In this document: piece after piece, positions 12,086-39,400 of the stretch
How the letters are laid out: each line of letters starts with the position of its first letter
Position numbering within the stretch: position 1 is the stretch's first letter
Source of the DNA: Octopus bimaculoides
Lineage: Eukaryota
Direction: 5' to 3'
Assembly (NCBI RefSeq): GCF_001194135.2
Contig: NC_068983.1
Coordinates: 146,025,285 to 146,089,284 of the forward strand
Length of the DNA: 64,000 nucleotides
Made by a program: the position numbers and the translations under genes
Notes under the pieces: generated by a model
The model's input: only the letters and a program-made list of their open reading frames with translations
What the model was told of the DNA's origin: nothing
The model's database searches: none

Positions 12086-12126
<41 letters not shown>

Positions 12127-12185
12127 CGGTGATGACGGTGATGATGATGACGATGATGATGATGACGACGATGATGATGACGATA
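11768..12185. repeat. (GAT/GAC)n trinucleotide microsatellite, partly duplicated across a 10-N gap
   Basis: Visible directly; source of the spurious poly-M and poly-D ORFs. Confidence 0.95.
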
Positions 12186-19208: not shown

Positions 19209-19259
19209 TCAAGCTGGTATCAAACTACGGTGAAGTATTGTTATTCAGTTTGAGAAGTA

Positions 19260-19292
19260 TATATAAAAAGAAATCGCTTATCGCCATTCAGT
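19260..19292 (+). promoter_or_regulatory. Core promoter of the neuropeptide gene: TATA box plus initiator
   Basis: TATATAAAAAG at 19260-19270 and the Inr TCAGT at 19288-19292 (A at 19290). TATA lies at -30/-28, the canonical spacing. No ATG occurs between 19290 and the start codon at 19367. Confidence 0.7.
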
Positions 19293-19366
19293 AGTCACAT
19301 ACCAAAGCTTCTTCCCCGGATTCTCTAGGACGTCTCAAAATTTTTTTCACAGTATAACCAAGAAGA

Positions 19367-19369
19367 ATG
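19367..19369 (+). CDS. Neuropeptide precursor, exon 1 coding part (ATG only; exon ~19290-19369)
   Basis: ccaagaagaATG|GTAAGT: consensus donor directly after the ATG, A at -3. Phase 0 matches exon 2, which lacks its own Met, and gives a complete signal peptide MVKITS... It is the best candidate seen, but N gaps in the intron could hide another exon. Confidence 0.72.
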
Positions 19370-19782
19370 GTAAGTAAACTAATGGCCACCTCTGACTGTC
19401 TCTTCTACTTTTACTTTCGCTATCTTCTTTCATTATTTATTTCTCTATTTCTCTCGCTCTCTCTCTTTCTCTCTCTCTCTCTCCATCTTACTCCGTCTCT
19501 CTTTCTCTTTCTCTCTCTCCCCTTCTCTCTCACACACACACGGTATATGCATACATGCATACATACATACAGACAGACTGACTGACAGGCAAACAGACAG
19601 ACATATACACATACACACATTATATGAAAACATTTGCTTTGCTTATATATTCGAATGAATGTAATTTATATGGGAGTGTTTATATGTACTTTTGGTATAT
19701 AGTTTGGCACGTATACAATATACACGCACACACACACAAACATATATACTTACATACATAAACACATGCATACATACACACG

Positions 19783-19813
<31 letters not shown>

Positions 19814-20176
19814 ACGTATGCATACATGTATACATACATATATATATATATATATATACACACATATTTGATAGTATAAGTGTGCTTTATAAGTTTGGTG
19901 CTTTACTATGAACATATATATANNNNNNNNNNNNNNNNNNNNNNNNNNNNNNNNNNNNNNNNNNNNNNNNNNNNNNNNNNNNNNNNNNNNNNNNNNATAT
20001 ATATATATATATATAAGTAACGAGAAGATGAATTTCGTATTAAACTTTATTCTATACAACGTTCATTTCGACCCGAAATATACCACGACTGCGGATGACA
20101 ACAGGTAGCCTAAACTCTGCCAGTGCTCTACTCAACACTTAAACACACTAATCGACTTATATCTATTAGTCCAAAA

Positions 20177-20233
<57 letters not shown>

Positions 20234-20268
20234 CATCATCATTATTATTATGATTATTATTATTATTA

Positions 20269-20315
<47 letters not shown>

Positions 20316-20386
20316 GTATATGAATATATATACACACACACAAATGCTTTCACAAATGCAACATCAACAAACATTAAGAAACATAA

Positions 20387-20453
<67 letters not shown>

Positions 20454-20711
20454 TAACTACATGTAGCTTATGATATTCAACTACTGTGAATAACAGTTTA
20501 GTTACATCTAAAAGATTAGAAAATTAAAAACTATTTGATCCCAGTTTTTTCTATATCAGTAAACAAACAGAATAGTAAAGGTATACAAAATTGTCGCATT
20601 TGATCGTAATTAGTTCCGACATACGATCAAAATAGCCGTTATTCATCATTTAAATTAACTGTTTGATGAATAAAACAAATTAGCAAACATTTAGTTTTTA
20701 TTACATCTGAT

Positions 20712-21770
20712 CTGCTGAAAAGGATTCGATCTGTCAGAGCCATTAGCACGCCGGGTAAAATGATTAGCGGTATTTTGTTCATCTTTACGTTCTGAGTTCA
20801 AATTCCGCCAAGACTGACTTTACTTTTCTGGGTCGACAGAATAAGTACCAGTTGAGTACTGGAATCATCCCCTTCCCCTAAATTGCTGGCCTTGTGCCAA
20901 AATTTGAAACCATTATTAATCTGCTGAAAGGCGGTGAACTGGTTGAATTGTTAGCACGCCGGGCAAATACTTAGCAGTGTTTCATCTGCCGCTACGTTCA
21001 GAGTTCAAATTTTGCCGAAGTCGACTTTGCCTTTCATCCTTTCATCCTTTCGGGGTCCATAAATTAAGTATCAGAGAAGCACCAAATTTCAGGCCTTATG
21101 CCTATAGTAGAAAGGTTTATTAATCTACTGAAAGGCAGCGAGCTGGCAGAATTGTTAGCACGCCGGGCAAATGCTTAACGCTATTTAATCTGTCTTGACG
21201 TTCGGAGTTCAAATTCCGCTGATGTCGACTTTACTTTCCATCCTTTCCGTGTCGATGAAATAAGTACCAGTCTAGTCCCCTCCCACAAAATTTCAGGCCT
21301 TGTGCCTATAGTAGAAAGGATTATTAATCTGCTGGCAACGGCAGCAAACTAGTAGAATCGTTAGCACGCCGGACAAAATGCTAGGTGGCATTTCATCCGT
21401 CTTTATATCTTGAGTTCAAATTCTGCCGAAGTCGACTTTTACTTTTATCCTTTCGAGTGTTGATAAAATTAGTATTAGTTGATTAATGGGGTCGTATAAT
21501 CGACTTACTCCGATATTGCTGGCCTTGTACCAAAATTTGAAATCATTATTATTATTAAGCCGGCAGAATTGTTAGCACACCGGCCAAAATGTTTAGCGAC
21601 TTTTCGCCTGTCTTTATGTTCTGAGTTCAAATTCCACCGTGGTAGACTTTACTTTTCCTCCTTCCAGTGATCAATAAAATTTGAGTACTACCGGGGTCGA
21701 GGTAATCGTCTAACCTCCTCCCCACATATTTCAGGCTTTGTCTTTATAGTAGAAAGAATTAGTATTATTT
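20712..21770 (+). mobile_element. Head-to-tail array of five family A SINEs in intron 1
   Basis: Five ~200-bp diverged copies (starts ~20712, 20928, 21132, 21338, 21557). The first three junctions share the linker ATTAATCT(G/A)CTG, and two different tail types are present. Confidence 0.88.
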
Positions 21771-22604
21771 TAGATTTATATTTGTACTTTGTAGACATCA
21801 ATATACATAATATTTGGTGACCTTACGAACATATTGAACTTCCATCAGCCAGAGTTGTCTATGTATCAGTATATGTACGCATAGGCTTGGGCTAGATTTT
21901 TTGGGTGGAAGCCTGGCAGGTGCCCATACATCCAAGTCTCCACTTTCCTTGCAACTGTTGATTATTCAATATAAAAACTCCCACTTTGGGCCGATTTTGG
22001 CACCAGTGTCGTCACAGACGTTGCTGTCTGAATGCAAAGAACCGAAACAGACAACCTTAGACATTTCGTTCCAACTCTCAAACCATTCCTCCGATTCAGC
22101 ACCCTAGGTTGGTACTCTAGTAGAAATCTTCAAAAATGTAAATTTGGAGTTTGTGGCTCGATAAAAACGATATGAAAAATCAGTTCACTTGAGAGATTAA
22201 TTTTATGCTAGACATTTTCTGAAATTCAAAATGTGACTCTAATCAGTTGTCAAAGAGTAAATATTAAAGAAAAAATATCGATTCTTATTAAGAGGTTAAT
22301 TTTTGTTTCTGTGGATATTGATGGGAGGGCAGAGAGTTCCAATAGATATAAAAAAAAATTTTGAAGAGCTAGAAAGAATATTGTAAAGTAGGAAACGTAC
22401 TTGTTGATAATACATCGTATTCATTTGCAAATGTGACTATATAAATATTAGTTTCAAATTTGGCCAGCAATTTCAGGCGAGGGGTAAGTCGATTAGATCG
22501 ACCCCAGTACTCAACTGATATTTATTATTATAATTACGTAATTATATTATGTGATTATATAAATATTAAAATCAAATAATTTATTTTAGAACAATTTTAG
22601 AGCT

Positions 22605-22815
22605 GCAAACCGGCATAATCGTTAATGCGTCAGACAAAATGTTTGGCGATATTTCTTCTCGCTATTTACGTTCTGAGTTCAAGTGTCACTGAGGTTGACT
22701 TTGCTTTTCTTTTTCCCAGGGCCGATAAAATAAGTACCGGTCAAGCACTGTCGTCGACGTAATTGACTTAATCCCTCCCCTAAAATTACTGGCCTTATGT
22801 TTAAGTTTGAAACCA
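22605..22815 (+). mobile_element. Octopus SINE family A
   Basis: ggcataatcgttaatgcg...ttctgagttcaagt..gaggttgactttgc...taagtaccggtcaagcactg...ggccttatgtttaagtttgaaacc. Confidence 0.8.
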
Positions 22816-23794
22816 TTTTTTTTTAAAACGTTTTTTTAAGAATATGAACATTCAATGGTGGTATGACTCCAGAGTCAGAATAAAATCAAATTTATTGTGA
22901 GGAGCCAGTTAAGTTGAATTTCACCATGTATGGGATTTTATGCGCTAACTTACTTTAAAAAAAAACACATTGCATAATATAACCGCATTCAGTGTCTTTA
23001 TAAAAGATGGGACGATCACGATTGAAACATCTTTGATTATTGGTTTTCTGGAAAGGGGCAGATATGTTGCTTTATCAAATTTTCCAGTAGTGAACGTTGG
23101 TCAGCAAATCTTCTGTGCTATACGATGAAATAGGGAAATGAAATGAAATAAAAACATTTAATAGTATTATTTGAAGATTTAATCCAAAAATAACTGTGCA
23201 AGTTGCTTAAAAATTTAGTTTCTAAGGTGTTCCTGTTGTCTAGATTTTGAACCAGTAGTCTATGTTCTTGGTTAAAGACGAGATGATTATAAGGTGTAAA
23301 GTTACTGTAGTCCATTGGATCGTCAGAAAACTACTGAAGACATCCTCTTTGCGAGAGACTACATCAGAATTGCTTACAGTGGCAGATTATAGCATCTTCG
23401 TTATGTATTTAAACCCAAAAAGAGTGGTGTACGTTAGCTTGAGATGTGCAAATCAGTGATAGATTTCGAATCGCTGACATCCCGATCAGTATAAAAGCGC
23501 TTGATCGCTTTGACCAACCATGTTCTCTAAAAGAAGTTTATTGTAATGGTTTTCTCTTTCTTAAAAAAAAATATTCAGATTAAGACATTTTCAGGCATTA
23601 CCAGTGAGATTCATGAGGTTGATGTTCAGCTTGAACTTCTTTAAATAAATAATTATAAGAAAAACATGGGTAAAGGGGAAATTCTATAAAACAGAATGAT
23701 GGGATTAGGCGAAGTTTTTATTCTCGGAGATACACCGAAAATAAACTGATTTGACACAAAATTAAATTTTACATTATAAAAAAAAAAACCAAGC

Positions 23795-24155
23795 ATATGA
23801 TCTTTGGTTCAGACCCACTGTGTAGCATCTATGACAAGTTTCTTTTCCTGTAACCCAGGGCCGACCAAGAGCCATATGAGGGGGTTGGTTGACGGTAACT
23901 GAAAGAAGCATGTCGTATATACGTGTGTGCGTTTTATGTCTATATGTCTTTCTGTTTGTACCGCACCAACACTTGACAACCGGTGTTGGTTTGTTTATGC
24001 TCCTGTAACATAGCGGTTCGACAAAAGAGACTGATAGAATAAGTTCCAGGCTTTTAAAATAGATACTGGTGTCGATTTGTTCGACTAAACACTTCAATGC
24101 AGTGTCCCAGTGTAACCGTAGTCCAATGACTGAGACAAGTAAAAGATAAAAAGAT
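23795..24155 (+). mobile_element. Octopus SINE family B (CORE-like head, central microsatellite)
   Basis: ggttcagacccactgtgtagcatc..gacaagt...gggccgaccaa...actgaaagaagc...ttgacaaccggtgttgg...tagcggttcgacaaaagagactgatagaataagt...aatgactgagacaagtaaaaga. The same family recurs at 25125-25460, 30520-30650, 37725-37830, 51150-51490 and 61470-61578. Confidence 0.85.
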
Positions 24156-24567
24156 TTTTTTTAAACCAGCTCAATTCATAATTTAGATGCGCAAATAGCA
24201 AATTGTATTCACCTGAAAATAAACTTTACATTAAACATAACATAATCTTTGTAATAAAGCGTAAGTTTTAATTTTCGTTAGAAAATGAACACTAATTTTC
24301 TTTTAGCTCTTAATTAACCATTACCTTACTTATTCGTTGACATCTAATAGTCAGATTCATATAAATGAGTTATTCCACCGTAATGGGTTGTCGACTTCGA
24401 TTGCACACAGTGCTTTGAGGTTTATTACTGTTGTTGATTAGCCTTAGAGCAGGGCTTTAATCAAAAGTATGTCGAGCATATATATTTTTTTTTGTTTTTA
24501 GTTGGGGGAACATTGAGGACTACATCACGTAATGCGTCCTTTTTAATCTGTATGATGTGATTTAGGG

Positions 24568-24864
24568 CAGTGCTACTCAAAGTGGTGGTACGCGGACCGG
24601 TGCCGGTCTGCGAGCTATCAGCTGCTGGTACGCGGCAAGTTTCCAGAAAAGAAACATTATAAAATGCTTATAAAATGCTTATGTAATATTCTATTATTTA
24701 TTTACAAAATAAATATAAGATAAAAAATATTGTCAACTTTTATTATATTCATTATATATATTGTTTCTGGCATAAATAAATATTACTAAGAAATATTGCC
24801 GGTCCCTGGCTCAGTGGGGGGGAAAAATGCCCGTACGCCACATCAGAAAGTTTGAGAAGCACTG
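24568..24864. mobile_element. hAT (Charlie-type) non-autonomous element/MITE, complete
   Basis: TIRs CAGTGCTACTCAAA (24568) and TTTGAGAAGCACTG (ends 24864). The 8-bp TSD is ATTTAGGG / GTTTAGGG, with the central TA typical of Charlie elements. Confidence 0.9.
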
Positions 24865-25124
24865 GTTTAGGGAATTTGGCAGCTTTTTTGTAATTCCTTT
24901 CTCTTTTTTTTTTCTTTTTTTTTTTTTTTCGCTGTAGAGTGAGTGTGATTTTAAGATTTGTCTGAAGATCAAACAACAATGTTGACGGTTTTCTTGGTAG
25001 AAATCGGATTTTTTGGCTTAAACTCACCTAAAAGATTTGAATTCAGAACTACAAACTAATAGAATCCAATAATGCAGAGTATATACCTTTCCACAGTAAT
25101 TATTCTTTTACTCTTTTACTTGTT

Positions 25125-25460
25125 TCAGCTGGATTGCGGCCATGCTGGGGCAACGTTTAATAGGATTAGTCGAGAAAATATAAACACAAACACACACATT
25201 CACACATATACATACATATATGTGTGTGCGTTTACATTATACATACACACATGCACACACACGCACACACACGCACACACACACACATATATATATATAC
25301 ACACATACACACACACGGGGGGCTTCGATACAGTTTCTGTCTACCAAATTCATCCAAAGAACAGCGATCCGCTCGAAGCCATAGTAGTAGACACTTTCTC
25401 AAGGTGCTCTGCATTTGGATTGAACGTGAAACTATGTGATTGCGAAGCGAACTTCGTAAC
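25125..25460 (-). mobile_element. Octopus SINE family B, degraded
   Basis: Reverse complement of family B: tttcagctggattgcggccatgctggggca... and cagtttctgtctaccaaatt...gacactttctcaaggtgc...ggattgaacgtgaaactatgtgattgcgaagcgaacttc. Confidence 0.75.
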
Positions 25461-25503
25461 CATACAGATGTCAGCAGTTAGGTGAATTGAGATTGTCTTG
25501 TTG

Positions 25504-25535
<32 letters not shown>

Positions 25536-26416
25536 GGTGGTGGTGGTGGTGGTGGTATTGCTGTTTAACTCCAAGTCAATCTTGATAGAGCAAGTCTACG
25601 ATCAAAGATGTTCCAGCTGTGATCATTCTGCCTTTCTGTGACTATCTAGGACTTGTATTATTTTAAGTGTCCTTCATTATCTAAGGCTCTTTCATGCAAT
25701 TTGAGAATGGTTTGGTTGTTCTTTAAGTTAATCTATCTCACAGACGATTAAGTACATTGCATTACGGTCAATGAATACGAACCATATAACCTTCTGTTAA
25801 TAGTCTGACGCCACATTGGCTCCACCAGCTGCGATTCTCCATTGAAGTTCATATTTATGATAGTTTGTTTTACGTGAAATAGTTTTTCTTTGGATTAAAT
25901 TAATACATTAAATATGTCATAAATTAGATTATTCTAATGGACAGATAGGATATTTATAATACGCTCTCACTCTAAAGATTTAGAATACACTTTTTCAATA
26001 AGTTATTCATCTATTATTATTCAGTTCACATCAAGGATACTTTATAGGAATATGTAATCGATCTCAGTACTTCGCCTGATGCTTTGTTTTCGACTCCATA
26101 TGGTATGAAAGGCAAAGTTGTGAACTCAGAAGGTAATGGGCCAGAACTAAACACTGTAAACATATTGTCCGATGCTTTAATGATGCTAATAGTCCACCGC
26201 TCGTTATTTGTCCGAGCCTATATGATGAGAGACAATCAAAAGAATATATTGAACAAAACGAATAAAATTTTGTAAAATATTCGCAAATGACGCATACAAA
26301 ATCTATCCTGCAAAGAGAGAAGTAAAAAACAGACTGCTAAATAAATATGATTGTAATATTACGTAAGATTCAATTTAGTAATCATGCATAATGTGGATTA
26401 TGTGCATTGTGACGGG

Positions 26417-26476
<60 letters not shown>

Positions 26477-27997
26477 CCGAAAAAGTGATGCCCAGAAAAC
26501 TTTAAGTAATGTGGAGTTGTGTTAAAGTGTTATTAAATGCATGTAACTCCAACTAAATGTGTCGAGCGCTACTTATTTGTTTGTTCACTCCCTGCAATAT
26601 ATAAGTGTGGATGTATGTGTGTTTTTATGTATATGTGTGTGTACAGGGAGAGAAAAAACACATCTATGTATTAATTCAATCTTTTAACGCTTTGTCGTAT
26701 TTGCGTTTCAGTCTCTTATAGTTCGTTCGAACAATAAAGTTGCCAAGTTCATTTTTAACAACGTTGCCAAGCTATCTCAGCCTCATCATGAGGATGTGGA
26801 ATGGCTTTTGATTTCTGTATTACCTACATCACATACCATCAAAACAAAAAGGGTTAGAAAAATACGAACAAAGACTACTCCCATACTTTACAGAATCCCC
26901 ACACACACACACACACCAAAAAAATAATAAAGTGATTAAGGAAACAATACTAATATCGCAACAAGAAGCTACAATTGACATACAATATACACACATTACA
27001 ATCTACAATTGACATACAATATACACACATCACAACTTCAAACACTTTTACAGAGGATAGAAGATTACAGGAGTGAAGCATATGTACCAGAATTGACAGA
27101 AGTAGTGGGCAAAATAAAACTAGTCATACATTATTCAAATAGAAAATATATTTTTCGAAGAACAGGCTGAACGATAAGTTAGCGGATAAAGTTAGATAAG
27201 AAATTGATAGAATCTGTAGATTATGTATCAACACTCAATTCAGCATCTATTCAGTAGAGCATTTAACCACGTAAAGCATTCAATCACGTATTATGAAACG
27301 GGTTTTGCCTGTTTTGTTGTAACAGCGCAATTGATGATATTGTAACTCTGTTTTCACAAAAATAAATGAATTCTCATTTAGATTAGATTCAATGCTTAAA
27401 GAAAAGTTGTAAAGGATAAGAATAAGATAGTATAAGAACCATAGTTACCAGAAAGACTTAAGGAAATCTGTTTTCATTAAATTATGCAGTCAATATGTTA
27501 GCTGCGCGGCAGAGCTATGAACATCGCATTATCTGAATACCTTTCTCTTCTATAATTTTCAGAAATGCAAATAAATCCCATTCAGATGCATATATATATA
27601 CACACACAATGAACACATCCATCCATCTATCCATCCATACATACATACATACATACATACATACAAACATACATACACATACATACGTACACACGTACAC
27701 ACACACATATATATATTCGGAATGGTAGATCCCAGAGTAAATAAATCAATAAATAATAGTGTGTAAATAACCTTTTCGATCGAAAAAGTCGAAGGCAGCC
27801 TTCGACCTTTTCTATCGAATGAATTTTTAACCCAATATCCACACGGTATCATTTCTAGATTTATTTGCTTCCAGATCTACCATTCCTTCCCACCGAAAAA
27901 AAAATTATTTCACGTTCTCTCGAAGTCTATGAAAGTTTCTTATGACATCAACAATATATATGTACGTGTGTGCGTGCGTGTGTGTGTGTGTGTGCAT

Positions 27998-28030
<33 letters not shown>

Positions 28031-28292
28031 TTAAATTTACAGAAAAACAAAAGACGAAGACATGTGTATGAACAACAAGCAGGTGTATTAGTTTGACACT
28101 CGGGAAAGTGAGAAAGTCTTTTACGTTTCGAGCCTACGCTCTTCAGCAGAAAAAAAATACGAGAAAATAAACAGAGAGAGAATTTTTAAAATCTTGTGGA
28201 TTTAGCGGTCATACATATATATACATATACATGTATTCATACATACACACACACATATAGACATACATACACACATATATGTATACACACAC

Positions 28293-28323
<31 letters not shown>

Positions 28324-29544
28324 TGTATGTATGTATGTGTGCATTATTTAATGAATAGAAATCAATTTGATTTTAGTCAGGACAAGATTACTATTTTCGC
28401 GTGGGGAGGTTTATAGTTGATTTTACTTAGTTGTTAAATTTCTTTCAAACTGCATCCTACCATCTTAAAGGAAAATACGTTTGCTCAATCAGAACTGACA
28501 TCGAAGTACAGAACATTTGTTACTTTTTATTCAATGCCGGCTAGATTTGATGATAAATTTATCACAGCTATGAAACGAACTCAGAAACTTGATATAAGTT
28601 ACTGTACTGAATCACATCTGGCGCTCCACCGTTTTTGCCAGTTTATTCAAGTCTTACCATCAGACTTAACGTACCGACTATACAGTACATTCACCCACTA
28701 GTGAACTTTTCTTCACTCTAAATATGATTCCCCATCAACGAGTTACAATGTAAATCTAAACTACGTCACTTGAACAGCCGCGTAGCTTCAACATATGCAT
28801 AAGCTCTGTTAATCGTTTATTTTGTGGTTTAAACATAATTACATACTTAAAAGAAATACTTTGCTAATTATCTTCAAAAATCAATATTATTCTACTAGAT
28901 AAAATGGAGTGATCGATTCATTTCAAACTTTATACTTGCGATGCCGTAATATAACATAAATAATATAAAAGATAGAAGCATAATTATTCTTTTAGGTACA
29001 CTGACTTCTAACACACGCACAAGTCCTTGCGCATTTCAGAGGAAAAGTGTAGTTGATTACACTTTTGGATTAAATCGATCCCAGGACCTATTTTTTAAAT
29101 AAGATTTCATATAGGATTTAGGGAACAATAGAGCCATTATTCAATGATCGGGTCACTCTATTTTACAATTTTAAAAAATGACTAGAGATTGCTTGTGCAA
29201 CACAGGCTAAACAAATATCACTCGAAGAATTTTCTTTCGAAAGCAGTGATTTATCAGTTTTCTCACCCCAACACAGCGGCGAAAGAGATACGTTTATATG
29301 TATGTATATATATATANNNNNNNNNNNNNNNNNNNNNNNNNNNNNNNNNNNNNNNNNNNNNNNNNNNNNNNNNNNNNNNNNNNNNNNNNNNNNNNNNNNN
29401 NNNNNNNNNNNNNNNNNNNNNNNNNNNNNNNNNNNNNNNNNNNNNNNNNNNNNNNNNATATATACATACATATATATATGTACACACACATATATAAATA
29501 TATATATACATACATACATACATACATACATACATACAGCCGAA

Positions 29545-29930: not shown

Positions 29931-29964
29931 GTACGTACGTACCCTGCTGTTAATTATTTACATT

Positions 29965-30010
29965 CCTAGTTCGATTCCAGGCAGTGACTTGAATAATAAT
30001 AATAATAATG

Positions 30011-30103
<93 letters not shown>

Positions 30104-30287
30104 TCGAAAGATACCTTAGGAATGAGATCCCAGGCTCGAAATTTCCCCAAGATACCTGATGAAAACTGGAGGGTATATCAGCCGAAACGTTGTGTTAACA
30201 GCAAACAAGATGAGGACAAACATCCGTCAGATGTAAATAATGCAAATAATGTACATAATTCCTCATCTCTTAAATATAGAACTGTAC
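29965..30287 (+). mobile_element. Penelope-like element terminal repeat (tRNA-like remnant + (AAT)n + hammerhead region), copy 1
   Basis: gttcgattccaggcagtgacttg-(AAT)n-...ggaatgagatcccaggctcgaaatttccccaagatacctgatgaaaactggagggtatatcagccgaaacgttgtgttaac...ttcctcatctcttaaatatagaactgt. Same family as the GIY-YIG-bearing copy at 55085-55872. Confidence 0.8.
30151..30196 (+). ncRNA. Minimal type I hammerhead ribozyme, degenerate stem II
   Basis: GAUAC-CUGAUGA-A-AACUG...CAGCC-GAA-ACGU-U-GUGUU. Core and stem I are intact, but the two stem II pairs next to the core are A-C mismatches (GGCUG in the 55 kb copy). Confidence 0.6.
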
Positions 30288-31791
30288 CTGCTGTTGATGT
30301 TGAAATTTCAATGAAGGAACCGTGGATCTAGGTTAGAAACCGGTTCTTTCTCTATTGGCAAGAAGTCTTGAAATAAACTGAATAATGACATACATACACA
30401 CATGCATATATACATACATACATACACACACACATACATACATTCATATATGCACACACATACATACATACATACATACATACATACATACATACACATT
30501 TGTTTATGTGTTTCTATGTGTGCGAGGGGCTTTTGCACTGCTTCCGTCTACCAAATTTTATTTGCAACGAATTTGTCAACCTGAGGCAAATATCAAATGA
30601 ATAGGAAGCAAACTTAACGACTCCGTAACCATGCCAGCACCCATTATACTGTATGGTAGTTACTTTAGTGACACCAGATAGTTGAAAGGTAGGTAAAGGA
30701 TCGTTACTAAATACAGCAAAGCAATCCGTCATTGCCTCTTTGCTTCATATTAGCGATCACTTTCGATTCTTCCTCATCATATGTAATGACTAGTGGAGTC
30801 ATGAATGTTAATGAGACAACGACTCCAAAATATTCACTTCTTGAATTTGCTTTTCTTACAGTATCAGTGTCCCAAATAGAACAAGACATCTTCAACAAAA
30901 CAATAAGCAAAGTCTATTAATTAATTTCTTTATAAAGCTAACAATTTACCAGAGTAAGTTGATGGAGTATCTTGGGTATCAATCACTCATTGACAATCGG
31001 GCTCTTTACTTACAGTCATGGCTTTATATTTATATATATATATATNNNNNNNNNNNNNNNNNNNNNNNNNNNNNNNNNNNNNNNNNNNNNNNNNNNNNNN
31101 NNNNNNNNNNNNNNNNNNNNNNNNNNNNNNNNNNNNNNNNNNNNNNNNNNNNNNNNNNNNNNNNNNNNNNNNNNNNNNNNNNNNNNNNNNNNNNNNNNNN
31201 NNNNNNNNNNNNNNNNNNNNNNNNNNNNNNNNNNNNNNNNNNNNNNNNNNNNNNNNNNNNNNNNNNNNNNNNNNNNNNNNNNNNNNNNNNNNNNNNNNNN
31301 NNNNNNNNNNNNNNNNNNNNNNNNNNNNNNNNNNNNNNNNNNNNNNNNNNNNNNNNNNNNNNNNNNNNNNNNNNNNNNNNNNNNNNNNNNNNNNNNNNNN
31401 NNNNNNNNNNNNNNNNNNNNNNNNNNNNNNNNNNNNNNNNNNNNNNNNNNNNNNNNNNNNNNNNNNNNNNNNNNNNNNNNNNNNNNNNNNNNNNNNNNNN
31501 NNNNNNNNNNNNNNNNNNNNNNNNNNNNNNNNNNNNNNNNNNNNNNNNNNNNNNNNNNNNNNNNNNNNNNNNNNNNNNNNNNNNNNNNNNNNNNNNNNNN
31601 NNNNNNNNNNNNNNNNNNNNNNNNNNNNNNNNNNNNNNNNNNNNNNNNNNNNNNNNNNNNNNNNNNNNNNNNNNNNNNNNNNNNNNNNNNNNNNNNNNNN
31701 NNNNNNNNNNNNNNNNNNNNNNNNNNNNNNNNNNNNNNNNNNNNNNNNNNNNNNNNNATGTGGTTGGTAAGCAAGCTACTTACCACGCAGA

Positions 31792-31822
<31 letters not shown>

Positions 31823-32985
31823 CTTTTCAAGTCCATTTATGTGAAACATTTTTGAGTGTGCTCATAAAAGTTCCTATGCTATTTATTCCAGGTATATATA
31901 TTCTCCTTAACTTCGTCTCTGTTTAGGTGACTTCAGTTGTCTGAGGAAGACAGATCAGCCCCCACATAATGCTAATAATAAGGCGAACATAATGGACTCT
32001 CAACATCCTAGAATGTCTAATTGTAATAAGAATCCATTTTAGGTAGTTTAATTCCCCTTCTTTATGTCATCAGCAGGAGCATAGATGAGCTAATATGGTA
32101 GTCCTAATATGGTAGTCCTAATATGGTCACTTGGTCTACCATATTTCTTTCAAGTCATACACTACCATCTTTAAAAATAAAAAAACACATTACATAATAT
32201 TCTCGTAGAAACAGTATGTCTGAGAAAAGGGACGGATACAGCTTGACTGTCTTTGGTTATAAGACCTGGGGCTAAGCAACAACAACACAACAACAACGGT
32301 AGGGAACAGTAAAATATGACGAACGCACCATTTGTTTTTAGGGAATGAATTTAACTGTTCTTGTGGCTATTAAAATAGGAATTGTTGTGTCCTCCGGGTT
32401 TCGTATATCTATGTCCAAGTCGCATCAACGCAATAGGCTTATACGCATCAGTGTAGAAAAGAGTTAAGAGTCTGACATAATGGTCGAGATAAAGCATTTT
32501 TTATTTGTATATATTTAGCTCACACTAATGTCACTGTATTGTTATAGGAAAGAGTGGATACAGTAAAACATGTTTGGAAATAAATTGAAAACAAAACAGA
32601 TTTACTATGTATATGTGTGCATATATGTGTATGCGTGCGTTGTGAAGACCTAAAGACTTTATAAAAAGACTTTATAAGCTAAAGAAAACAAAAGATTTAT
32701 TGTGTGTGTGTGTGTATTCGTACTCGTATGTGTGTATGTGTGTATGTGTGCAAACGGAAATCTTTATAAAGACTTCATAATATAAAGGATACAATGGATT
32801 TAGCCTGCGCGCATGCTTGTATAATTTTAGCAAAATATTTTTAGTATGTGTGTGTGTGAATTTCAATGTATGATTATGTGTGTATGTGATGTAAGTGTTG
32901 TGAAGACCGAAGATGTTATAAGATAAAAAAATTAAAATATTAAGTTATACGTATACGCGTTTGCGTATGTGTGTGTGCGTGTGTG

Positions 32986-33020
<35 letters not shown>

Positions 33021-33368
33021 ACGTTTTCATGTCTATATAGTTGTGCGTGTAAAAACGCATCGGTTGGTTCAGGCGGAAGACGGGATAGCCCAGAATAAAC
33101 AAATATTTTAATCGGAATTTACAAACTGAATAGATTTTTGGATCATTATGATTTCTATTGTTTTGTTAATAGGTTGATATTGAATGATAAATTGTAAAGG
33201 TCTGTTTAGATTTCGCCTCAAATACAACAAAATATTTCTATAAAATCAGTGTTTTAAAATGTCCGTTGTATCAAGCTTCCCCCACTTCGGCACTTTTAAA
33301 CGCGTACAGTTTTTGTTTCCTAAACTTGTGTTAGAGGAAGAGTAAAGCATATCATAATGATTTCTAAT

Positions 33369-33568
33369 TTAGATACAAAGCCAATAATTTCGGGCAGGAG
33401 TGTTTAGTCTATTACATCGCGACCAAGGTTTTATTTTAACGACTTCGGCAGGATGAAAAGTAAAGGTGACCTCAGTGATAATTGAACTCAGAACGTAAAG
33501 TGTCGGAATAAATATCGCGAAGGATATTGCCAGACGTTCTAGTGATTCTTCCAATCTAACATCCTTGC
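33369..33568 (-). mobile_element. Octopus SINE family A, degraded
   Basis: ggatgaaaagtaaaggtgacctcag...ttgaactcagaacgtaaag...gattcttccaatctaacatcctt, the reverse orientation of the family consensus. Confidence 0.75.
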
Positions 33569-34629
33569 AGCAGTATAAAATAATATATCATAAGTTAATA
33601 CCAAATTATCCAAGTGAGGATGGTATTCCACTAAATCCTCCTTGTATCACTGCCTCAAATCTTAAACAAGAATGGGATACATTAAATGTTATAGTCCTAT
33701 ATTATTCCTGAAAAAGCGGCATGATCATGGTTGGAATTCGTATAACCATAGGTCATCTCAGTAGAAGTGGACCTGAGGGCTACACAGTGTCATCTTCATC
33801 TTCATCATCGACTTTTTATCGTACATCTGTGGAGAATCAGCTTAAAGACCCTTCCCTACCATCTTCAGCCTTTTACCAAATATGGAGTTGAACTTACCTC
33901 TGTTATTAATGGGGCCGATGCCAGTCTGTTTACTGAAACAGCCTCGTTCAAATTTCTTTCAAATCACATCCTCATATCTTAAACCTTTTAGTCAAAATTC
34001 ACTGCATTTAGATACGAATCTGTTTCAATTCTACGCGCCTCATTACGTAACTGCCGGCGTGCTTAGCAAATTTGTTTTGCAACTATCGTTAGATATACAT
34101 ATAATACTCATCTCGATTGTAAGGAGCCTAAATTGTTTTAAGAATTTTATATCATCTATACCACAAAAAACATAATGTACACACCCCTTATTTTAATTTT
34201 CATTTTGTTGAAAAAAAGGAGTTATACAAAGACTTTACGTTATGTAGTTACGGGCTCGATCGCACTACAAGCATCTTGGACCTGAGTCCTCCGCCATAGA
34301 GCCAATACTTAACTATATCTCACAATGGTGCCTATTTGTGCTTAGTATTTCCAATCAGTTTTTCAATGCACTACATGAAATATATTCACCACTATTTAAC
34401 GTTGATTTTTTAGGCGAAAAATGTTTCAATTAGGCAAAGTAGGTGTTTTATTTTTTATGCTAATTTTCCACTGCTATTTGGATTATAATATTACATGGTT
34501 GCGTTTAAAATCAGAACATAAAGCGACGTCATAAAATATCGAAAAATGTTTTTCGTCCAGCTCTCTATCGACTTCGAAATACATCACTCGTTCACATAAA
34601 AAAAACTACTAACATTCATGTTAGTTCAA

Positions 34630-34840
34630 AGGCAGTTAGCTGACAGAATTGTTAGAACGTAGGGTAAAAAAAAATGCTTTGCTGTATTTCTTCAGTTTCA
34701 TTACGTTCTGAATTCAAATTTCGCCAAGGTTGACTTTACTTTTCATCCTTTTGGAGTCAAGTGCTGGGATTGATGCAATCGACTTGTCCCTGACCCTCAA
34801 AATAGTTGGCTTTGTATTCAAATTAGAAAGAAATATTAAT
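34630..34840 (+). mobile_element. Octopus SINE family A just upstream of exon 2
   Basis: aggcagttagctgacagaattgttag...ttacgttctgaattcaaatttcgccaaggttgactttacttttcatccttttggagtc...caaattagaaag. Confidence 0.8.
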
Positions 34841-34936
34841 ATCAGTTCAATTGAAATTTACAGAATGTTGTGAATGTTTTTGTATTTATTGTTTATTTGT
34901 GTCTTCAATTTTTATTTTTTATTTTTTTATACTCAG

Positions 34937-35124
34937 GTAAAAATTACGTCCATATGCTTTTGCTTCCTTTTGGGATTGGGAGTATTGTTTGATTCCTGGG
35001 CTGAAGCCGGCTGCGCCAGACCTTGCCTTTTGAGTTTCTTTCGGTGTGTCAGAAGCGTTGAAGAAGAATGCTGTAGTGGTTACAGAACTTGCATGAAAGA
35101 TGCCTGTGATGTCGCAAATCCATC
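34937..35124 (+). CDS. Neuropeptide precursor exon 2: signal peptide plus most of the cysteine-rich peptide
   Basis: Strong acceptor (long T tract ...ttttttatactcAG|) and donor (|GTAAGT at 35125). The 188 nt (phase 0 to phase 2) encode VKITSICFCFLLGLGVLFDSWAEA GCARPCLLSFFRCVRSVEEECCSGYRTCMKDACDVANP(S), with a hydrophobic core and an A-E-A signal peptidase site. Confidence 0.92.
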
Positions 35125-35196
35125 GTAAGTACAACTATTTCACTTTCATATAATTAATCCTTGTATCGAACTCTGATTTGTTGGTTCTCTTAGATT

Positions 35197-35246
<50 letters not shown>

Positions 35247-36305
35247 AGAGAAGAGAAGGAATTTTATAACAGTGCATGACTTTTCGAATAACGTACGAGC
35301 CGTGAGAAGACAATGACACCAGATGTGAAGATATTTTGCTCTCAGCATCCTATACCGTCTAATTGTGAGCGAAAGTCCACTTTCGGTAGCTTAGGAAGAC
35401 AGACAAGCTAATGAATCACTGTGCAATAGTTCGAATGTAATAAATAGCAACCAAGTATCCTTCAAATCAAACCCCACAATCTTAAGAAGGAAGTACATAT
35501 CGAACAATGTAGTCCGATATGATCTTTAAAACACAAATCACACATTTTGATCGAAGGATATAAATGGTTAAATCCTTTTCGGTACTTCTACTTACTTTAT
35601 TGACCCCGAAATAATAGTCACTTGCTAACATCAGAGCCTCTATGTGGTCACTCGATCTGCTATAAATATCAGTAAGTGAATCGCTCTCTCAAACCACACC
35701 CTATAGTCTTCAAAAAGAAAGAACTCTCAGGATAATGAAGTCAAAGATGAGAAAATCACAGCTGGAACGTCTCTAATCAAAGATTTGCTCAGTCAGGACT
35801 CAATCTAAACTAAATCGAGAACAACATCTTCCATTCCTTTCCAATCACAGAGTCTCTGTTAACATATGAATTCTGTTCCTTGAGTTCGCAGCAACTACAG
35901 TACTTCGATATCTAGTTTTCACATTATACAGTAAAATCACTTGAATACAAATCATTGATATTGTTTTTCTAAAATCGTTCCGTGCTTTAGAGATCTGAGC
36001 TCAAGTCTTGAATGTGGAGCAACTTTTACATTTATTGTAGGTAGTAGATATAATTGTTCAAAAGTTTGAACGGGATACAGTTTATTTTAGTAACAAAATG
36101 ATTAGTGCAAATAAATTAAATCACAAATGATGTAGAATGATTGCTGTATATAAAAGTCAGCTTCGAATTTGATCATTTATATCAAAGCTGTTTTACACTT
36201 TCTTATTAGTCAGCAATGTTTTGTACGAACCAATAATGTTGTTCAGTTCATTAATATTACAAGACCTTTTCAATATCATCCATATCATTCCATTAGAATC
36301 CTCAA

Positions 36306-36484
36306 AGTTATGATACGTACATGGTGGTCGTCAACTTAACGGTGTTGTGTAAGCTGTTATTCACTGTAAATTTCAGCACGGGAATTGCTGAGAGCCATTG
36401 TCTTTAACATCTAGGATTACACAGTTTATCGATGATGGCCATACTAGTCTACGAGTTGACAGCCACCATGTATGCATCATAACT
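36306..36484. mobile_element. Small MITE-like element with ~31-bp imperfect terminal inverted repeats (intron 2)
   Basis: agttatgatacgtacatggtggtcgtcaact (36306-36336) versus agttgacagccaccatgtatgcatcataact (36454-36484): 4 mismatches. Confidence 0.6.
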
Positions 36485-37216
36485 CTTAGAATTCTAATAA
36501 AATATCTTCTATGACAGTTTACGAAAGTTTAACATCGTTACATGTAAACGCAGTTAACGGCAGCCATTTTAATCGTCTGACAACACATTTGCATGAACTT
36601 TTCAAACATTTCTTAAATGGTTTTACCACGATTAGAATGTGTTGCTTGAGAAAAGGGAAGAGTTTCCTAATTGCTTCGCATTTTCGTGAATGATTAGACA
36701 GTTAGAGCTGTCTTTCTCCCCAGATAAATAGAAAATAATTATATAGTTAATTTATCTGGCTAGGAATTGTCTCTTAAAATGAGTGTGTGTGTGTACATCA
36801 TTGTGTATGTATATGTGTGTGTGTGTGTCTGTGTATGTACGTACGTACGTATGTATGTATGTATGTATGTATGTATGTATGTATGTATGTATGTACGTAT
36901 GTATGTATAAAAATATGTGAGATAGAAATTAATTCACGCGACTCTTTATTTAGAGCCACTACGATAGTTTTGACTCATCATGCACCAGTACCTTACCGGT
37001 AAGATGTACAAACAATTGTCATGCATCATTGGTGCAGATGCGTTTCCTCAAGTGACTTCTGAAAAAATTACCTCGTTTTTTTTTATATCTAGCCGTTTCG
37101 CTTATTTCTATAACAATACACTTTTGGTTAGTGTAGCATATTATCCTTCCTCATAAGGAACTGCGATATTTATGTATGTTTGTATGTATGTATGTATGTA
37201 TGTATGTATGTATATA

Positions 37217-37259
<43 letters not shown>

Positions 37260-38701
37260 NNNNNNNNNNNNNNNNNNNNNNNNNNNNNNNNNNNNNNNNN
37301 NNNNNNNNNNNNNNNNNNNNNNNNNNNNNNNNNNNNNNNNNNNNNNNNNNNNNNNNNNNNNNNNNNNNNNNNNNNNNNNNNNNNNNNNNNNNNNNNNNNN
37401 NNNNNNNNNNNNNNNNNNNNNNNNNNNNNNNNNNNNNNNNNNNNNNNNNNNNNNNNNNNNNNNNNNNNNNNNNNNNNNNNNNNNNNNNNNNNNNNNNNNN
37501 NNNNNNNNNNNNNNNNNNNNNNNNNNNNNNNNNNNNNNNNNNNNNNNNNNNNNNNNNNNNNNNNNNNNNNNNNNNNNCACGCACACGCACACGCACACAC
37601 ACACGCACGCACACACACACACACACAAACACGAGCACGATTGTTTTCCATATACTTTTCGTCAACGAAATCCCACTGAAAGTATTGGTAAACCTATGGC
37701 TGGAAAAAGTAGAAGACTGTACGGTAGTCCCAGCTACCGTACAGTGGGATCGAACTTTGAACCACTTTGTTGCGAAGCGAATTTCTAAATCAGACGGCCA
37801 GCCATGCCGACACTTCATATAGTTTCGGATAGCATAACTGCACAGAATCACCTTTACCTTGAGTATTTATTCCGTGGTACTTAGCAGACACTGAGTTTCC
37901 TATAACATGATAACTACTTAAAACACATAACAGGTATAAATGACTTTGCAGGAATGATAATGCTATATCTGTAGATACAAACAGCGAGAATGATAAAGTT
38001 AGTGTCTGGCAAAATACCCTGCAATTAATAATTACATTTCTTTACAGTTCAGCTAAGGATTAGTTTGCCTTTCCTCTTTCCCAGTAATATACAACCTCCT
38101 ACAACCTCCTCCACTCCAAACAAACAGTTCTCTCCGTATGTTACTGTAGTAAAACCTATATTTCTGTCAACAAAATGTTTTTACTGTTGTTTAATTCCAG
38201 ATCCTCTCTGATCAAAGAAACTGATGGCGAAAGTCGTTCTAGTTGTGAACATTTCATCTTATTTGGAACTACATTGTCTAATGCATTTCCTTTTAAGATA
38301 GTCAGATATTGTTTGGGGGAGATTTAGTTAGTATTTCTAGTTGGTCTGGTTATGACGTAAAAGCTCCCTAGTTGGCTCGTTCCAGAGTCTCGGTAACTCT
38401 CAAGGTAACAACGGCCTACATATTTCAAAGCATAAGGTATCCATTTTGGCCCATTTTGCTCTTATTACTGCTGCAAGTAACATTTATTCAAAATACTGCA
38501 TAGTATCAGTGTTACAATATGATGTTACGTTCATCAGGTAAAAGAGATTATCTGCTTTACGTATAAATATCTTGTATGAGAAGTTGAGAAAATCCAATCT
38601 CCTTACTGTAGACCATCCAACTAACACGTTATGGCCTTCGTTTCAGAAGATAGTATCGCAACTTGAGCTCATTATTACTTTTTTTTCTCTTTAACTTTTA
38701 G

Positions 38702-38933
38702 ATGCAATGATAATGTCGGTAAACGAAGTGGCTGGTATAAACGTGGAAGTTGGGACAAACGTGGAAGCTGGAATAAGAAAAGTGATGATCAAACCAAACG
38801 TGGCAGCTGGAACAAACGTTCGGATGAAGAGGACAGCAAACGAGGCAGCTGGAACAAACGACAAGAAACGGACGACTTCTCTGAGGCAATGCTTAAGAAA
38901 GTCCTTAATGAAAACTATGGAGTCCACTTGTAA
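38702..38933 (+). CDS. Neuropeptide precursor exon 3: GSWD (Ocp-3/Ocp-4 cardioactive peptide), 3x GSWN, SGWY and spacers
   Basis: Acceptor ttttttttctctttaactttt AG| at 38700-38701. Phase 2 completes Ser (TC|A), then CNDNVG KR SGWY KR GSWD KR GSWN KK SDDQT KR GSWN KR SDEEDS KR GSWN KR QETDDFSEAML KK VLNENYGVHL TAA. It supplies the 8th Cys and nine dibasic sites. The ORF track missed it because this frame has no upstream Met. Confidence 0.95.
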
Positions 38934-39165
38934 ACAAATTATACTAATAATACATATATATAGAAACATATGTATATTATGATAAAATGTGAACTAAACT
39001 TTTCCTCTGGGATATTAACTGCATACAAATGGAAAGGATTATTACACGCCGGTTAGCACGAATGCCAAGACATTTCTTCTGTAAGATTCTTCGCAGCTAA
39101 CAGTATGGAATTTAAAGGCTCTTCAAACCAACCTGCATTTTAAACATTTCATGCTTTTTTTTTTT

Positions 39166-39400
39166 AATAAATTCATTTTCCTGAAACCGTTTCTTTCTTC
39201 ATCATTTTTAAAAATCATTTATCTGTTATATCTTTTATTTTATACATTACTTTTATTTTTTTACCTTATGATTATCGGATGATCTCTTATTGTTGTGGAT
39301 ATCAGTAAAAATCTGAACCTGACGAGTTTGGAATCTATATGTATTTTTATTTTGCCTTTCAGGTTGCTATATTAAATATGTTGACTGAACTAGCAATAAA
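39166..39400 (+). terminator. Candidate polyadenylation signals of the neuropeptide gene
   Basis: AATAAA at 39166-39171 and 39395-39400 in a U-rich 3' UTR, before the SINE cluster that starts at ~39455. Confidence 0.45.

What the first reader, a model, noticed from the sequence alone, without database searches (positions are those of the whole stretch)
19290..39400. Hidden three-exon neuropeptide gene encoding the octopus cardioactive peptide GSWD (Ocp-3/Ocp-4)
Seen in sequence: an ATG|GTAAGT exon behind a TATA+Inr promoter, exon 2 (34937-35124) and exon 3 (38702-38933) splice in compatible phases (0, then 2) with canonical GT-AG. The product is a 140-aa ORF with a 25-aa signal peptide and nine KR/KK sites releasing SGWY, GSWD, GSWN x3 and acidic spacers. 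Established knowledge: Gly-Ser-Trp-Asp is Ocp-3, a cardio-excitatory peptide isolated from Octopus minor brain, whose D-Ser2 isomer is Ocp-4. Inference: this locus is the Ocp-3/4 precursor gene. The architecture (Cys-rich domain plus short Trp peptides) recalls lophotrochozoan CCWamide-type precursors, but I cannot verify that, nor whether this precursor is already annotated. None of the supplied ORFs shows the peptide exon in the right frame.
Basis: partly seen in the sequence, partly recalled or inferred. Interest (0 to 1): 0.92.

Follow-up and report, generated by a model that had tools for sequence, protein, structure and literature searches.

The report
Octopus GSWN/GSWD neuropeptide precursor gene
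This is a real, already annotated but unnamed octopus gene for a small secreted precursor that is cut into the tetrapeptides GSWD and GSWN; it belongs to a known mollusc neuropeptide family, and it is the likely source of a heart-stimulating octopus brain peptide whose gene had not been named.

Summary
Exons 19367-19369, 34937-35124 and 38702-38933 (+) join through GT-AG introns into a 140-aa ORF. It has a 25-aa signal peptide, an 8-Cys domain and nine dibasic sites that release SGWY, GSWD and three GSWN.

The gene is not hidden. The product is 100% identical to RefSeq XP_014770093.1 (LOC106869081, Octopus bimaculoides, "uncharacterized"). All four assembly gaps are intronic. Gap-free O. vulgaris and O. 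sinensis loci are collinear across them.

Argonauta hians has the same three-exon plan. A squid (Todarodes) brain mRNA, published in 2023 as "achatin-related", is a colinear orthologue.

Profile comparison (98.9%, E 1.7e-17) places the protein in the mollusc "GSWN" precursor family described in oyster in 2021. It is not a CCWamide, achatin, SMB or WAP protein.

The link to Ocp-3/Ocp-4 is plausible: there is one GSWD copy flanked by KR on both sides. It appears in no paper I could search. It rests on my memory of Iwakoshi et al. 2000, which I could not read, and the O. minor gene was not examined.

Verdict: an ordinary member of a known family with a useful new functional link. Interest is modest.

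The parts
19258..19267 (+). TATA box (TATATATAAA)
   Evidence: It is conserved in Argonauta hians at the same spacing. Identity is 74% from the TATA box to the splice donor, against 38-40% in the flanks.
19288..19292 (+). Initiator-like TCAGT; the likely transcription start is the A at 19290
   Evidence: ATTCAGTAGT is identical in Argonauta. No transcript end data are available, so the start site is inferred.
19290..19369 (+). Exon 1: a 77-nt 5' leader plus the start codon ATG (19367-19369), followed by the donor GTAAGT
   Evidence: O. vulgaris, Argonauta and the O. vulgaris paralogue all have the same ATG|gtaagt first exon.
19370..34936 (+). Intron 1 (phase 0), holding assembly gaps 19923-19996, 29317-29457 and 31046-31757
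   Evidence: It is collinear with the gap-free O. vulgaris and O. sinensis loci across every gap.
34937..35124 (+). Exon 2: residues 2-64 (first two bases of codon 64), covering the signal peptide (residues 1-25, cleavage after A-E-A) and seven of the eight Cys of the Cys-rich domain
   Evidence: The hydrophobic core spans residues 4-19. Nucleotide identity to O. vulgaris is 98.8%. The Argonauta exon has the same 188-nt length and the same boundaries.
35125..38701 (+). Intron 2 (phase 2), holding assembly gap 37260-37577
38702..38933 (+). Exon 3, coding part: the eighth Cys, NDNV-G (amidation signal), all tetrapeptide copies, spacers, the C-terminal peptide and the stop codon
38727..38738 (+). 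SGWY (residues 73-76), flanked by KR on both sides
   Evidence: This copy reads GSWN in squid and is degenerate in Argonauta.
38745..38756 (+). GSWD (residues 79-82), flanked by KR on both sides; this is the sequence attributed to Ocp-3 and Ocp-4
   Evidence: GSWD copies flanked by KR are also present in the Todarodes mRNA.
38763..38774 (+). GSWN copy 1 (residues 85-88), flanked by KR and KK
38802..38813 (+). GSWN copy 2 (residues 98-101), flanked by KR on both sides
38844..38855 (+). GSWN copy 3 (residues 112-115), flanked by KR on both sides; the only copy kept with dibasic flanks in every cephalopod compared
38934..39400 (+). 3' UTR with AATAAA signals at 39166 and 39395 (ATTAAA at 39371); which one is used is not known
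   Evidence: Identity to O. vulgaris is 92% from 37853 through 39728.

Best explanation
The locus is the Octopus bimaculoides gene LOC106869081. It is a TATA-driven gene with three coding exons for a 140-aa preproneuropeptide of the molluscan GSWN precursor family.

Shown:
- The exon structure and the reading frame.
- Identity to the RefSeq gene model.
- Orthology to a squid brain mRNA and to the oyster Cragi-GSWN precursor.
- Purifying selection on the coding sequence.

Inferred:
- The 25-aa signal peptide is removed after A-E-A.
- Prohormone convertases cut at the nine KR/KK sites, and a carboxypeptidase trims the basic residues.
- This releases one GSWD, three GSWN, one SGWY, acidic spacers, a C-terminal peptide, and a 44-residue 8-Cys peptide ending in Val-amide (from ...NDNV-G-KR). 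That peptide is predicted to fold as a disulfide-stapled helical hairpin.

Inferred from prior biochemistry that I could not re-read: GSWD is Ocp-3, the cardio-excitatory peptide of Octopus minor brain, and part of it is converted after translation to the D-Ser2 form, Ocp-4. The D residue at position 2 is the same position as in achatin-I and D2-ATRP. GSWN is the ancestral conserved product and probably acts on the same or a related receptor.
For: - Sequence and splice sites.
- 100% identity and 100% coverage to XP_014770093.1, and the same CDS span on CM046603.1.
- The O. vulgaris/O. sinensis orthologue differs by one residue. The CDS is 98.8% identical with 4 synonymous and 1 conservative change, against about 86-92% identity in the introns.
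- Argonauta has the same exon boundaries and phases, and a conserved promoter and leader.
- A Todarodes brain transcript of 149 aa is colinear from end to end and encodes four GSWN and two GSWD.
- Bivalve and gastropod relatives share signal peptide, C-x3-C-x6-C-x(7-13)-CC-x5-C-x3/4-C-x6/8-C, then KR-GSWN-KR, then an acidic and aromatic tail. hhalign gives 98.9% probability, E 1.7e-17.
- The oyster member is Cragi-GSWN. Its C-terminal peptide YQVSQGYEDRELYPYY was detected by mass spectrometry in ganglia, which proves cleavage after GSWN-KR in a relative.
- Hydrophobic core at residues 4-19, with an A-x-A cleavage motif.
- The D residue at position 2 is the rule in the molluscan achatin and ATRP systems.
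Against: - There are no transcript or peptide data for O. bimaculoides itself. No intron-less RNA contig carrying this protein was on record.
- The identity of Ocp-3/4 with GSWD could not be read in any source held here.
- The Octopus minor gene was not examined.
- In Argonauta the GSWD motifs are not flanked by dibasic sites and only one GSWN is cleanly excisable. GSWD is therefore not a conserved product across octopods.
- Signal peptide cleavage was judged by rule, not by a trained predictor.
- The structure model has only moderate confidence: mean pLDDT 62, and 82-86 in the Cys domain.
Confidence: 0.85

Rival explanations
1. The gene is a GSWN-family precursor, but it is not the source of Ocp-3/Ocp-4. 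Those peptides would come from another gene, such as a paralogue or the achatin-type precursor that must supply GFGD, or they would arise in extracts by deamidation of the C-terminal Asn of GSWN.
For: - A tandem paralogue with the same exon plan exists and encodes a different G-x-aromatic-D peptide: KR-GNYD-KR in O. bimaculoides.
- GSWN copies outnumber GSWD three to one.
- O. minor was not examined.
Against: - The precursor encodes GSWD directly, with KR on both sides, and so does the squid orthologue.
- A profile search seeded with words such as RGSWD and GSWDK found no other cephalopod protein.
- The paralogue's tetrapeptide is not even conserved between two Octopus species: GNYD against GNDD, with the second site lost.
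Confidence: 0.1
2. The product is mainly a secreted cysteine-rich protein, as the automatic UniProt names 'SMB domain-containing' and 'WAP domain-containing' suggest. On this view the repeated tail is a low-complexity linker, not a set of bioactive peptides.
For: - The 8-Cys domain is the longest conserved block across molluscs.
- UniProt carries automatic SMB and WAP names for family members.
- A paralogue, CAI9719506.1, has the Cys domain without any GSWN.
Against: - No family member reaches any Pfam domain, including SMB and WAP.
- The Cys spacing puts CC at Cys 4-5, unlike WAP or SMB (from my own knowledge of those patterns).
- The model is a helical hairpin with no PDB match.
- KR-GSWN-KR is invariant in bivalves, gastropods and cephalopods.
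- Processing after GSWN-KR is shown by mass spectrometry in oyster.
- Expression is in squid brain and oyster ganglia.
Confidence: 0.04
3. The gene model is an artefact of a gapped assembly. Exons would be wrongly joined across unread sequence, or a coding exon would be lost in a gap.
For: Four runs of N lie between the exons, and the estimated gap lengths are unreliable. For example, 712 N at 31046-31757 corresponds to at most about 305 nt in O. vulgaris.
Against: - All gaps are intronic.
- Two gap-free congener assemblies are collinear through the whole gene and give the same 140-aa product.
- The gap-free Argonauta locus has the same three exons.
- The squid mRNA has no extra residues at either junction.
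Confidence: 0.01

Closest known systems
Todarodes pacificus 'achatin-related peptide' precursor (TRINITY_DN1065_c0_g3; PMC10172372, 2023)
   Same: It is the orthologue, 59% identical and colinear from MVK to the C-terminal ENYG..L. It has the same signal peptide motif LFDSW, the same 8-Cys spacing, a G-KR amidation signal after the Cys domain, and repeated KR-GSWN/GSWD-KR. It is expressed in brain.
   Different: The squid has six copies (four GSWN, two GSWD) and no SGWY. Octopus has one GSWD, three GSWN and one SGWY. The authors relate it to achatin and state it is the first report in a cephalopod. They do not cite the Ocp peptides.
Mollusc GSWN precursor family (Cragi-GSWN, LOC105336174; PMC8398477, 2021)
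   Same: Both have a signal peptide, then an 8-Cys domain with conserved Cys positions, then (G)KR-GSWN-KR, then an acidic and aromatic C-terminal peptide. hhalign gives 98.9% probability, E 1.7e-17.
   Different: Bivalves and Lottia carry a single GSWN copy. Cephalopods, and gastropods such as Nucella (about ten copies) and Elysia (GSWS plus GSWN), have several. The GSWD variant was seen only in cephalopods. Bivalve and gastropod (Elysia, Lottia) Cys domains contain C-K-R, a possible internal cleavage site, where octopus has C-V-R.
Achatin / Ocp-1 type precursors (GFAD, GFGD, GFWD, GFFD)
   Same: Both give acidic, non-amidated tetrapeptides that start with Gly, are repeated between dibasic sites, and are reported to carry a D residue at position 2.
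   Different: In achatins the aromatic residue is at position 2. Here it is at position 3, with Ser at position 2. Most copies here end in Asn, not Asp. Oyster has a separate achatin gene (GFWD/GFGD) as well as Cragi-GSWN. No sequence similarity to an achatin precursor was shown here.
CCWamide precursors (lophotrochozoan)
   Same: Both are small secreted precursors with Cys and Trp residues.
   Different: CCWamide is listed as a distinct family beside GSWN in the same oyster survey. This protein has no Trp-Gly-dibasic site, so no Trp-amide can form.

Membership tests
Mollusc GSWN neuropeptide precursor family (Cragi-GSWN) | N-terminal signal peptide | tested here: met
   Hydrophobic core at residues 4-19 and an A-E-A|G cleavage motif. 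It aligns with the signal peptides of all relatives. No trained predictor was available.
Mollusc GSWN neuropeptide precursor family (Cragi-GSWN) | Cysteine-rich region with strictly conserved Cys positions | tested here: met
   Octopus has C-x3-C-x6-C-x7-CC-x5-C-x4-C-x6-C. Oyster has C-x3-C-x6-C-x7-CC-x5-C-x3-C-x6-C. The Cys columns are invariant or nearly invariant across 13 sequences.
Mollusc GSWN neuropeptide precursor family (Cragi-GSWN) | Short GSWN peptide between dibasic cleavage sites, directly after the Cys-rich region | tested here: met
   There are three KR-GSWN-K[KR] copies plus KR-GSWD-KR. KRGSWNKR is invariant in the six bivalve and gastropod sequences.
Mollusc GSWN neuropeptide precursor family (Cragi-GSWN) | Overall sequence homology to described members | tested here: met
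   hhalign of the cephalopod profile against the bivalve/gastropod profile gives 98.9% probability, E 1.7e-17 over 74 columns. The oyster hit carries the MS-verified Cragi-GSWN peptide YQVSQGYEDRELYPYY.
Mollusc GSWN neuropeptide precursor family (Cragi-GSWN) | Expression in nervous tissue and processing into peptides | not testable with these tools
   This is shown only in relatives: squid brain RNA-seq and oyster ganglia MS. No O. bimaculoides RNA contig was on record.
Ocp-3/Ocp-4 precursor (Octopus minor cardioactive peptides) | Encodes Gly-Ser-Trp-Asp in an excisable context | tested here: met
   KR-GSWD-KR at residues 77-84, window 38745-38756.
Ocp-3/Ocp-4 precursor (Octopus minor cardioactive peptides) | The published Ocp-3/4 sequence is GSWD / G-(D-Ser)-WD | not tested
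   Iwakoshi et al. 2000 is not held. A review that should list the sequences is not held either. No open paper prints the sequences. This rests on recollection.
Ocp-3/Ocp-4 precursor (Octopus minor cardioactive peptides) | Orthologue in O. minor encodes the peptide; D-Ser2 is formed in vivo | not testable with these tools
   No O. minor sequence was reachable, and chirality needs chemistry.
Achatin-type precursors | Repeated G-[F/Y]-x-D tetrapeptides with the aromatic residue at position 2 | tested here: not met
   The peptides are G-S-W-[DN], with Ser at position 2 and Trp at position 3. Oyster keeps achatin and GSWN as separate genes.
CCWamide precursors | Mature peptide ending in Trp-amide (a W-G-dibasic site) | tested here: not met
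   There is no W-G-K/R site. The only amidation signal is V-G-KR after the Cys domain. CCWamide is listed as a different family from GSWN.
SMB (somatomedin B) or WAP four-disulfide-core domain proteins | Match to the domain model | tested here: not met
   None of 13 family members gives a Pfam hit at E<=1. The AlphaFold model is a helical hairpin and has no PDB fold match at E<=0.001.

The most novel reading that the evidence does not exclude
The GSWN family would be a second, achatin-like system of D-amino-acid peptides spread across Mollusca. GSWN and GSWD would be isomerised at Ser2, as reported for Ocp-4. They would act as cardio- and neuroactive transmitters through a dedicated stereoselective GPCR. 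The co-released amidated 8-Cys helical-hairpin peptide would be a hormone in its own right. The octopus gene would then give a function to a family now listed as 'function unknown'.
Probability: 0.3. Interest if true: 0.55.

Novelty: new member of a known kind. Interest (0 to 1): 0.3.

Why it matters
In the literature I could search, two strands have not been joined. One is a bioactive peptide pair purified from octopus brain in 2000, for which I found no precursor. The other is a mollusc-wide "GSWN" precursor family, described in 2021 and 2023, that has genes but no known function.

If the link holds, the family gains a candidate activity (cardio-excitation). It also gains a candidate modification (D-Ser at position 2). 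Peptides carrying a D residue are hard to find, so this is useful.

It also corrects the label "achatin-related" for the squid gene, and the automatic SMB and WAP names in UniProt.

It does not reveal a new kind of gene. The gene model is already in RefSeq.

Tried and rejected
- **Intron-less RNA contigs.** I looked for contigs carrying the exact protein in public assemblies. Only the genome record was found, so there is no direct transcript evidence for this species.
- **Pfam.** Searching the protein and 12 relatives gave no SMB, WAP or any other domain.
- **Structure.** The AlphaFold2 model has moderate confidence and Foldseek against the PDB found nothing below E=6. The fold is not informative beyond "helical hairpin".
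- **Ocp-3/4 sequences.** Five searches and two direct look-ups all failed to find a source.
- **Gene and protein accession numbers in papers.** None were found.
- **GFGD precursor.** A synthetic (KRGFGD)n query, meant to find the octopus Ocp-1/2 precursor and test kinship with achatin, found nothing usable. That question stays open.
- **Tandem paralogue in the window.** It is absent. In O. vulgaris it lies about 48 kb away.
- **tRNA and Rfam scans of the window.** Both were empty.
- **CCWamide reading.** Rejected.
- **Gap-artefact reading.** Rejected.

Full report
**What is in the sequence**

- The start codon at 19367-19369 is followed at once by GTAAGT.
- Exon 2 (34937-35124) lies between a polypyrimidine-CAG acceptor and a GTAAGT donor.
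- Exon 3 begins after TTTTAG at 38702 and reaches TAA at 38931-38933.

The joined CDS is 423 nt, giving 140 aa, with intron phases 0 and 2. Of the three frames of exon 3, only the peptide frame is open.

The protein has these parts:
- a hydrophobic N-terminus (core at residues 4-19) ending in A-E-A;
- a 44-residue segment with eight cysteines, followed by G-KR;
- the series KR-SGWY-KR-GSWD-KR-GSWN-KK-SDDQT-KR-GSWN-KR-SDEEDS-KR-GSWN-KR;
- a 23-residue tail containing one KK.

Upstream, TATATATAAA starts at 19258. A TCAGT initiator-like motif sits 30 nt downstream at 19288-19292. The 77-nt leader contains no ATG.

**The assembly gaps**

All four runs of N inside the finding lie in introns, so their unknown length cannot change the frame. 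The remaining question is whether the flanks are really contiguous and whether a coding exon is hidden.

Gap-free loci from O. vulgaris (GCA_951406725.2) and O. sinensis (GCA_006345805.1) align collinearly with the window from about 18.8 kb to 41.2 kb. Each gap is bracketed by matches. The congener sequence across each gap is only about 25 to 640 nt. The 712-N gap at 31046-31757 is clearly over-estimated.

Those assemblies give the same 140-aa protein, apart from D121E. The gap-artefact reading is rejected.

**The gene is already annotated**

The spliced product is 100% identical over 100% of its length to XP_014770093.1, "uncharacterized protein LOC106869081 [Octopus bimaculoides]" (UniProt A0A0L8IFA5). 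The annotated gene on CM046603.1 has exactly the CDS span of the window model, 19,567 nt. So the window comes from that assembly, and the gene is not hidden. It is only unnamed.

Annotated orthologues are XP_029634124.1 (O. sinensis), CAI9719516.1 (O. vulgaris) and GAB1600580.1 (Argonauta hians).

**Conservation**

Between O. bimaculoides and O. vulgaris the CDS is 98.8% identical. There are four synonymous changes and one conservative replacement. The surrounding intron sequence is about 86-92% identical. This indicates purifying selection.

In Argonauta the three exons have the same boundaries and phases (L002 3001-3003, 21341-21528, 22558-22774). The TATA box, the ATTCAGTAGT motif and much of the leader are conserved: 74% identity against about 40% in the flanks.

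A brain transcript of the squid Todarodes pacificus is printed in a supplement of PMC10172372. It is colinear with the octopus protein from MVK to the C-terminus (59% identity) and has no extra residues at either exon junction. This is mRNA-level support, from an orthologue, for both splice joins.

**Which family it belongs to**

An exhaustive profile search of 1.84 billion representative proteins found only six hits. A second, word-seeded profile search found thirteen. The informative hits are small mollusc proteins with one architecture: signal peptide, eight Cys at conserved positions, (G)KR-GSWN-KR, then an acidic and aromatic tail. They come from Magallana (Crassostrea) gigas, Mytilus, Mizuhopecten, Solemya, Lottia, Elysia and Nucella.

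The oyster protein ends in YQVSQGYEDRELYPYY. That is the peptide Réalis-Doyelle et al. detected by mass spectrometry and assigned to "Cragi-GSWN". That paper defines GSWN as a mollusc-specific precursor family with strictly conserved Cys positions and GSWN.

A profile-profile comparison of four cephalopod sequences against six bivalve and gastropod sequences gives 98.9% probability, E 1.7e-17. Every sequence-level defining feature of the family is met.

The same paper lists CCWamide as a different family. The octopus protein cannot yield a Trp-amide.

The squid authors called their gene "achatin-related". However:
- achatins carry the aromatic residue at position 2;
- oysters possess a separate achatin gene (GFWD/GFGD) alongside Cragi-GSWN.

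I treat the two as distinct families with a similar logic. Common ancestry was not tested, because my attempt to retrieve an octopus GFGD precursor failed.

The UniProt automatic names "SMB domain-containing" and "WAP domain-containing" are not supported:
- no family member matches any Pfam model;
- the AlphaFold2 model shows two helices (residues 28-40 and 46-58, pLDDT 82-86) forming a hairpin, followed by a disordered repeat region;
- the model has no PDB fold match.

**How it most likely works**

Shown: the gene structure, the frame, the orthology and the family membership.

Shown in relatives only: expression in brain or ganglia, and cleavage at the KR after GSWN.

Inferred from standard prohormone processing:
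- signal peptide removal;
- convertase cleavage at the nine dibasic sites;
- carboxypeptidase trimming;
- amidation of the Cys-rich peptide at Val69, with Gly70 as the amide donor.

The products would be GSWD (one copy), GSWN (three copies), SGWY (one copy), spacers and a tail.

Inferred from prior biochemistry: GSWD is Ocp-3, and its D-Ser2 epimer is Ocp-4, from Octopus minor brain. The paper exists and is cited as a source of octopus D-amino-acid peptides. A D residue at position 2 fits the molluscan pattern described for achatin and ATRP.

One caution applies. GSWN, not GSWD, is the universally conserved product. In Argonauta the GSWD motifs lack dibasic flanks, and only one GSWN is cleanly excisable. 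GSWD therefore looks like a lineage-specific variant, seen here in Octopus and Todarodes.

**Novelty**

- The gene model is in RefSeq.
- The family was described in 2021.
- The squid orthologue was described in 2023. Its authors noted that eight deposited homologues encode GSWN/GSWD, which presumably include this protein, and they already planned to look for D residues.
- The explicit connection to Ocp-3/4 appears in none of the open literature searched. The squid paper does not cite the Ocp work and calls its peptide the first of its kind in a cephalopod. No paper mentions the gene's accession numbers.

That link is useful but incremental. I rate the finding a new member of a known kind, with interest 0.3.

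**Surroundings**

Nothing else of note lies inside the finding. Both introns contain microsatellites and a ~207-nt dispersed repeat. No tRNA or Rfam match occurs anywhere in the window.

A tandem paralogue with the same three-exon plan lies about 48 kb away in O. vulgaris. It is outside this window.

Noticed in passing
Outside the window; O. vulgaris OX597816.1, L003 10001-21650: A tandem paralogue (O. vulgaris CAI9719515.1; O. bimaculoides A0A0L8IFG7) has the same ATG|gtaagt three-exon plan and the same 8-Cys domain. It lies about 48 kb from the orthologue of this gene. It encodes KR-GNYD-KR in O. bimaculoides but GNDD-TR in O. vulgaris, so its peptide region is evolving fast.
   Followed up: partly
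O. vulgaris CAI9719506.1 (P0006), same chromosome: A third relative of 92 aa has the same signal peptide start (MVK) and the same 8-Cys spacing, but no GSWN or GSWD peptide. This suggests a small local gene family built on the Cys domain.
   Followed up: no
L002 22558-22774 (Argonauta hians exon 3): The Argonauta orthologue has degenerate peptide copies: GNWNHA, and ASWDETKPGSWDEI without dibasic flanks. Only one KR-GSWN-KK is clean. Its Cys domain ends in E-KR rather than G-KR, so it would not be amidated.
   Followed up: partly
window 31046-31757, and the other gaps: Estimated gap sizes are unreliable. The 848 nt between the flanking matches in the window (31046-31892), 712 of them N, correspond to about 305 nt in O. 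vulgaris; the 74-N gap at 19923-19996 corresponds to about 25 nt.
   Followed up: yes
window 34491/34493 and 37851/37853: O. vulgaris and O. sinensis carry insertions relative to the window of about 1.7 kb just upstream of exon 2 and about 1.0 kb in intron 2. These are probably transposable-element insertions or deletions between species.
   Followed up: no
window 21080-21474, with similar copies at 14477-15070 and 20710-21769: A unit of about 207 nt is repeated in tandem in intron 1, with dispersed copies upstream of the gene. It looks like a SINE-like octopus repeat.
   Followed up: no
window 45570-45941 (+) and 47083-47382 (-): ORF fragments resemble Tc1/mariner transposase, with the motif HPPISPDLAPCDCFLFPKIK. 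Only a weak DDE_3 match was found (E 0.12, below the cut-off). The element is interrupted by gap 46332-47082 and is a decayed transposon remnant.
   Followed up: partly
window 11768-12301: A long poly-Met and poly-Asp 'ORF' is simply an (ATG)n/(GAT)n microsatellite around a 10-N gap. Many other listed ORFs are gap or microsatellite artefacts.
   Followed up: no
Nucella lapillus KAL8591767.1 (P0005); Elysia chlorotica P0010: Multi-copy GSWN precursors also exist in gastropods. Nucella has about ten R-GSWN-KR copies behind a 6-Cys domain, and Elysia has GSWS plus GSWN. Copy expansion is therefore not specific to cephalopods.
   Followed up: partly
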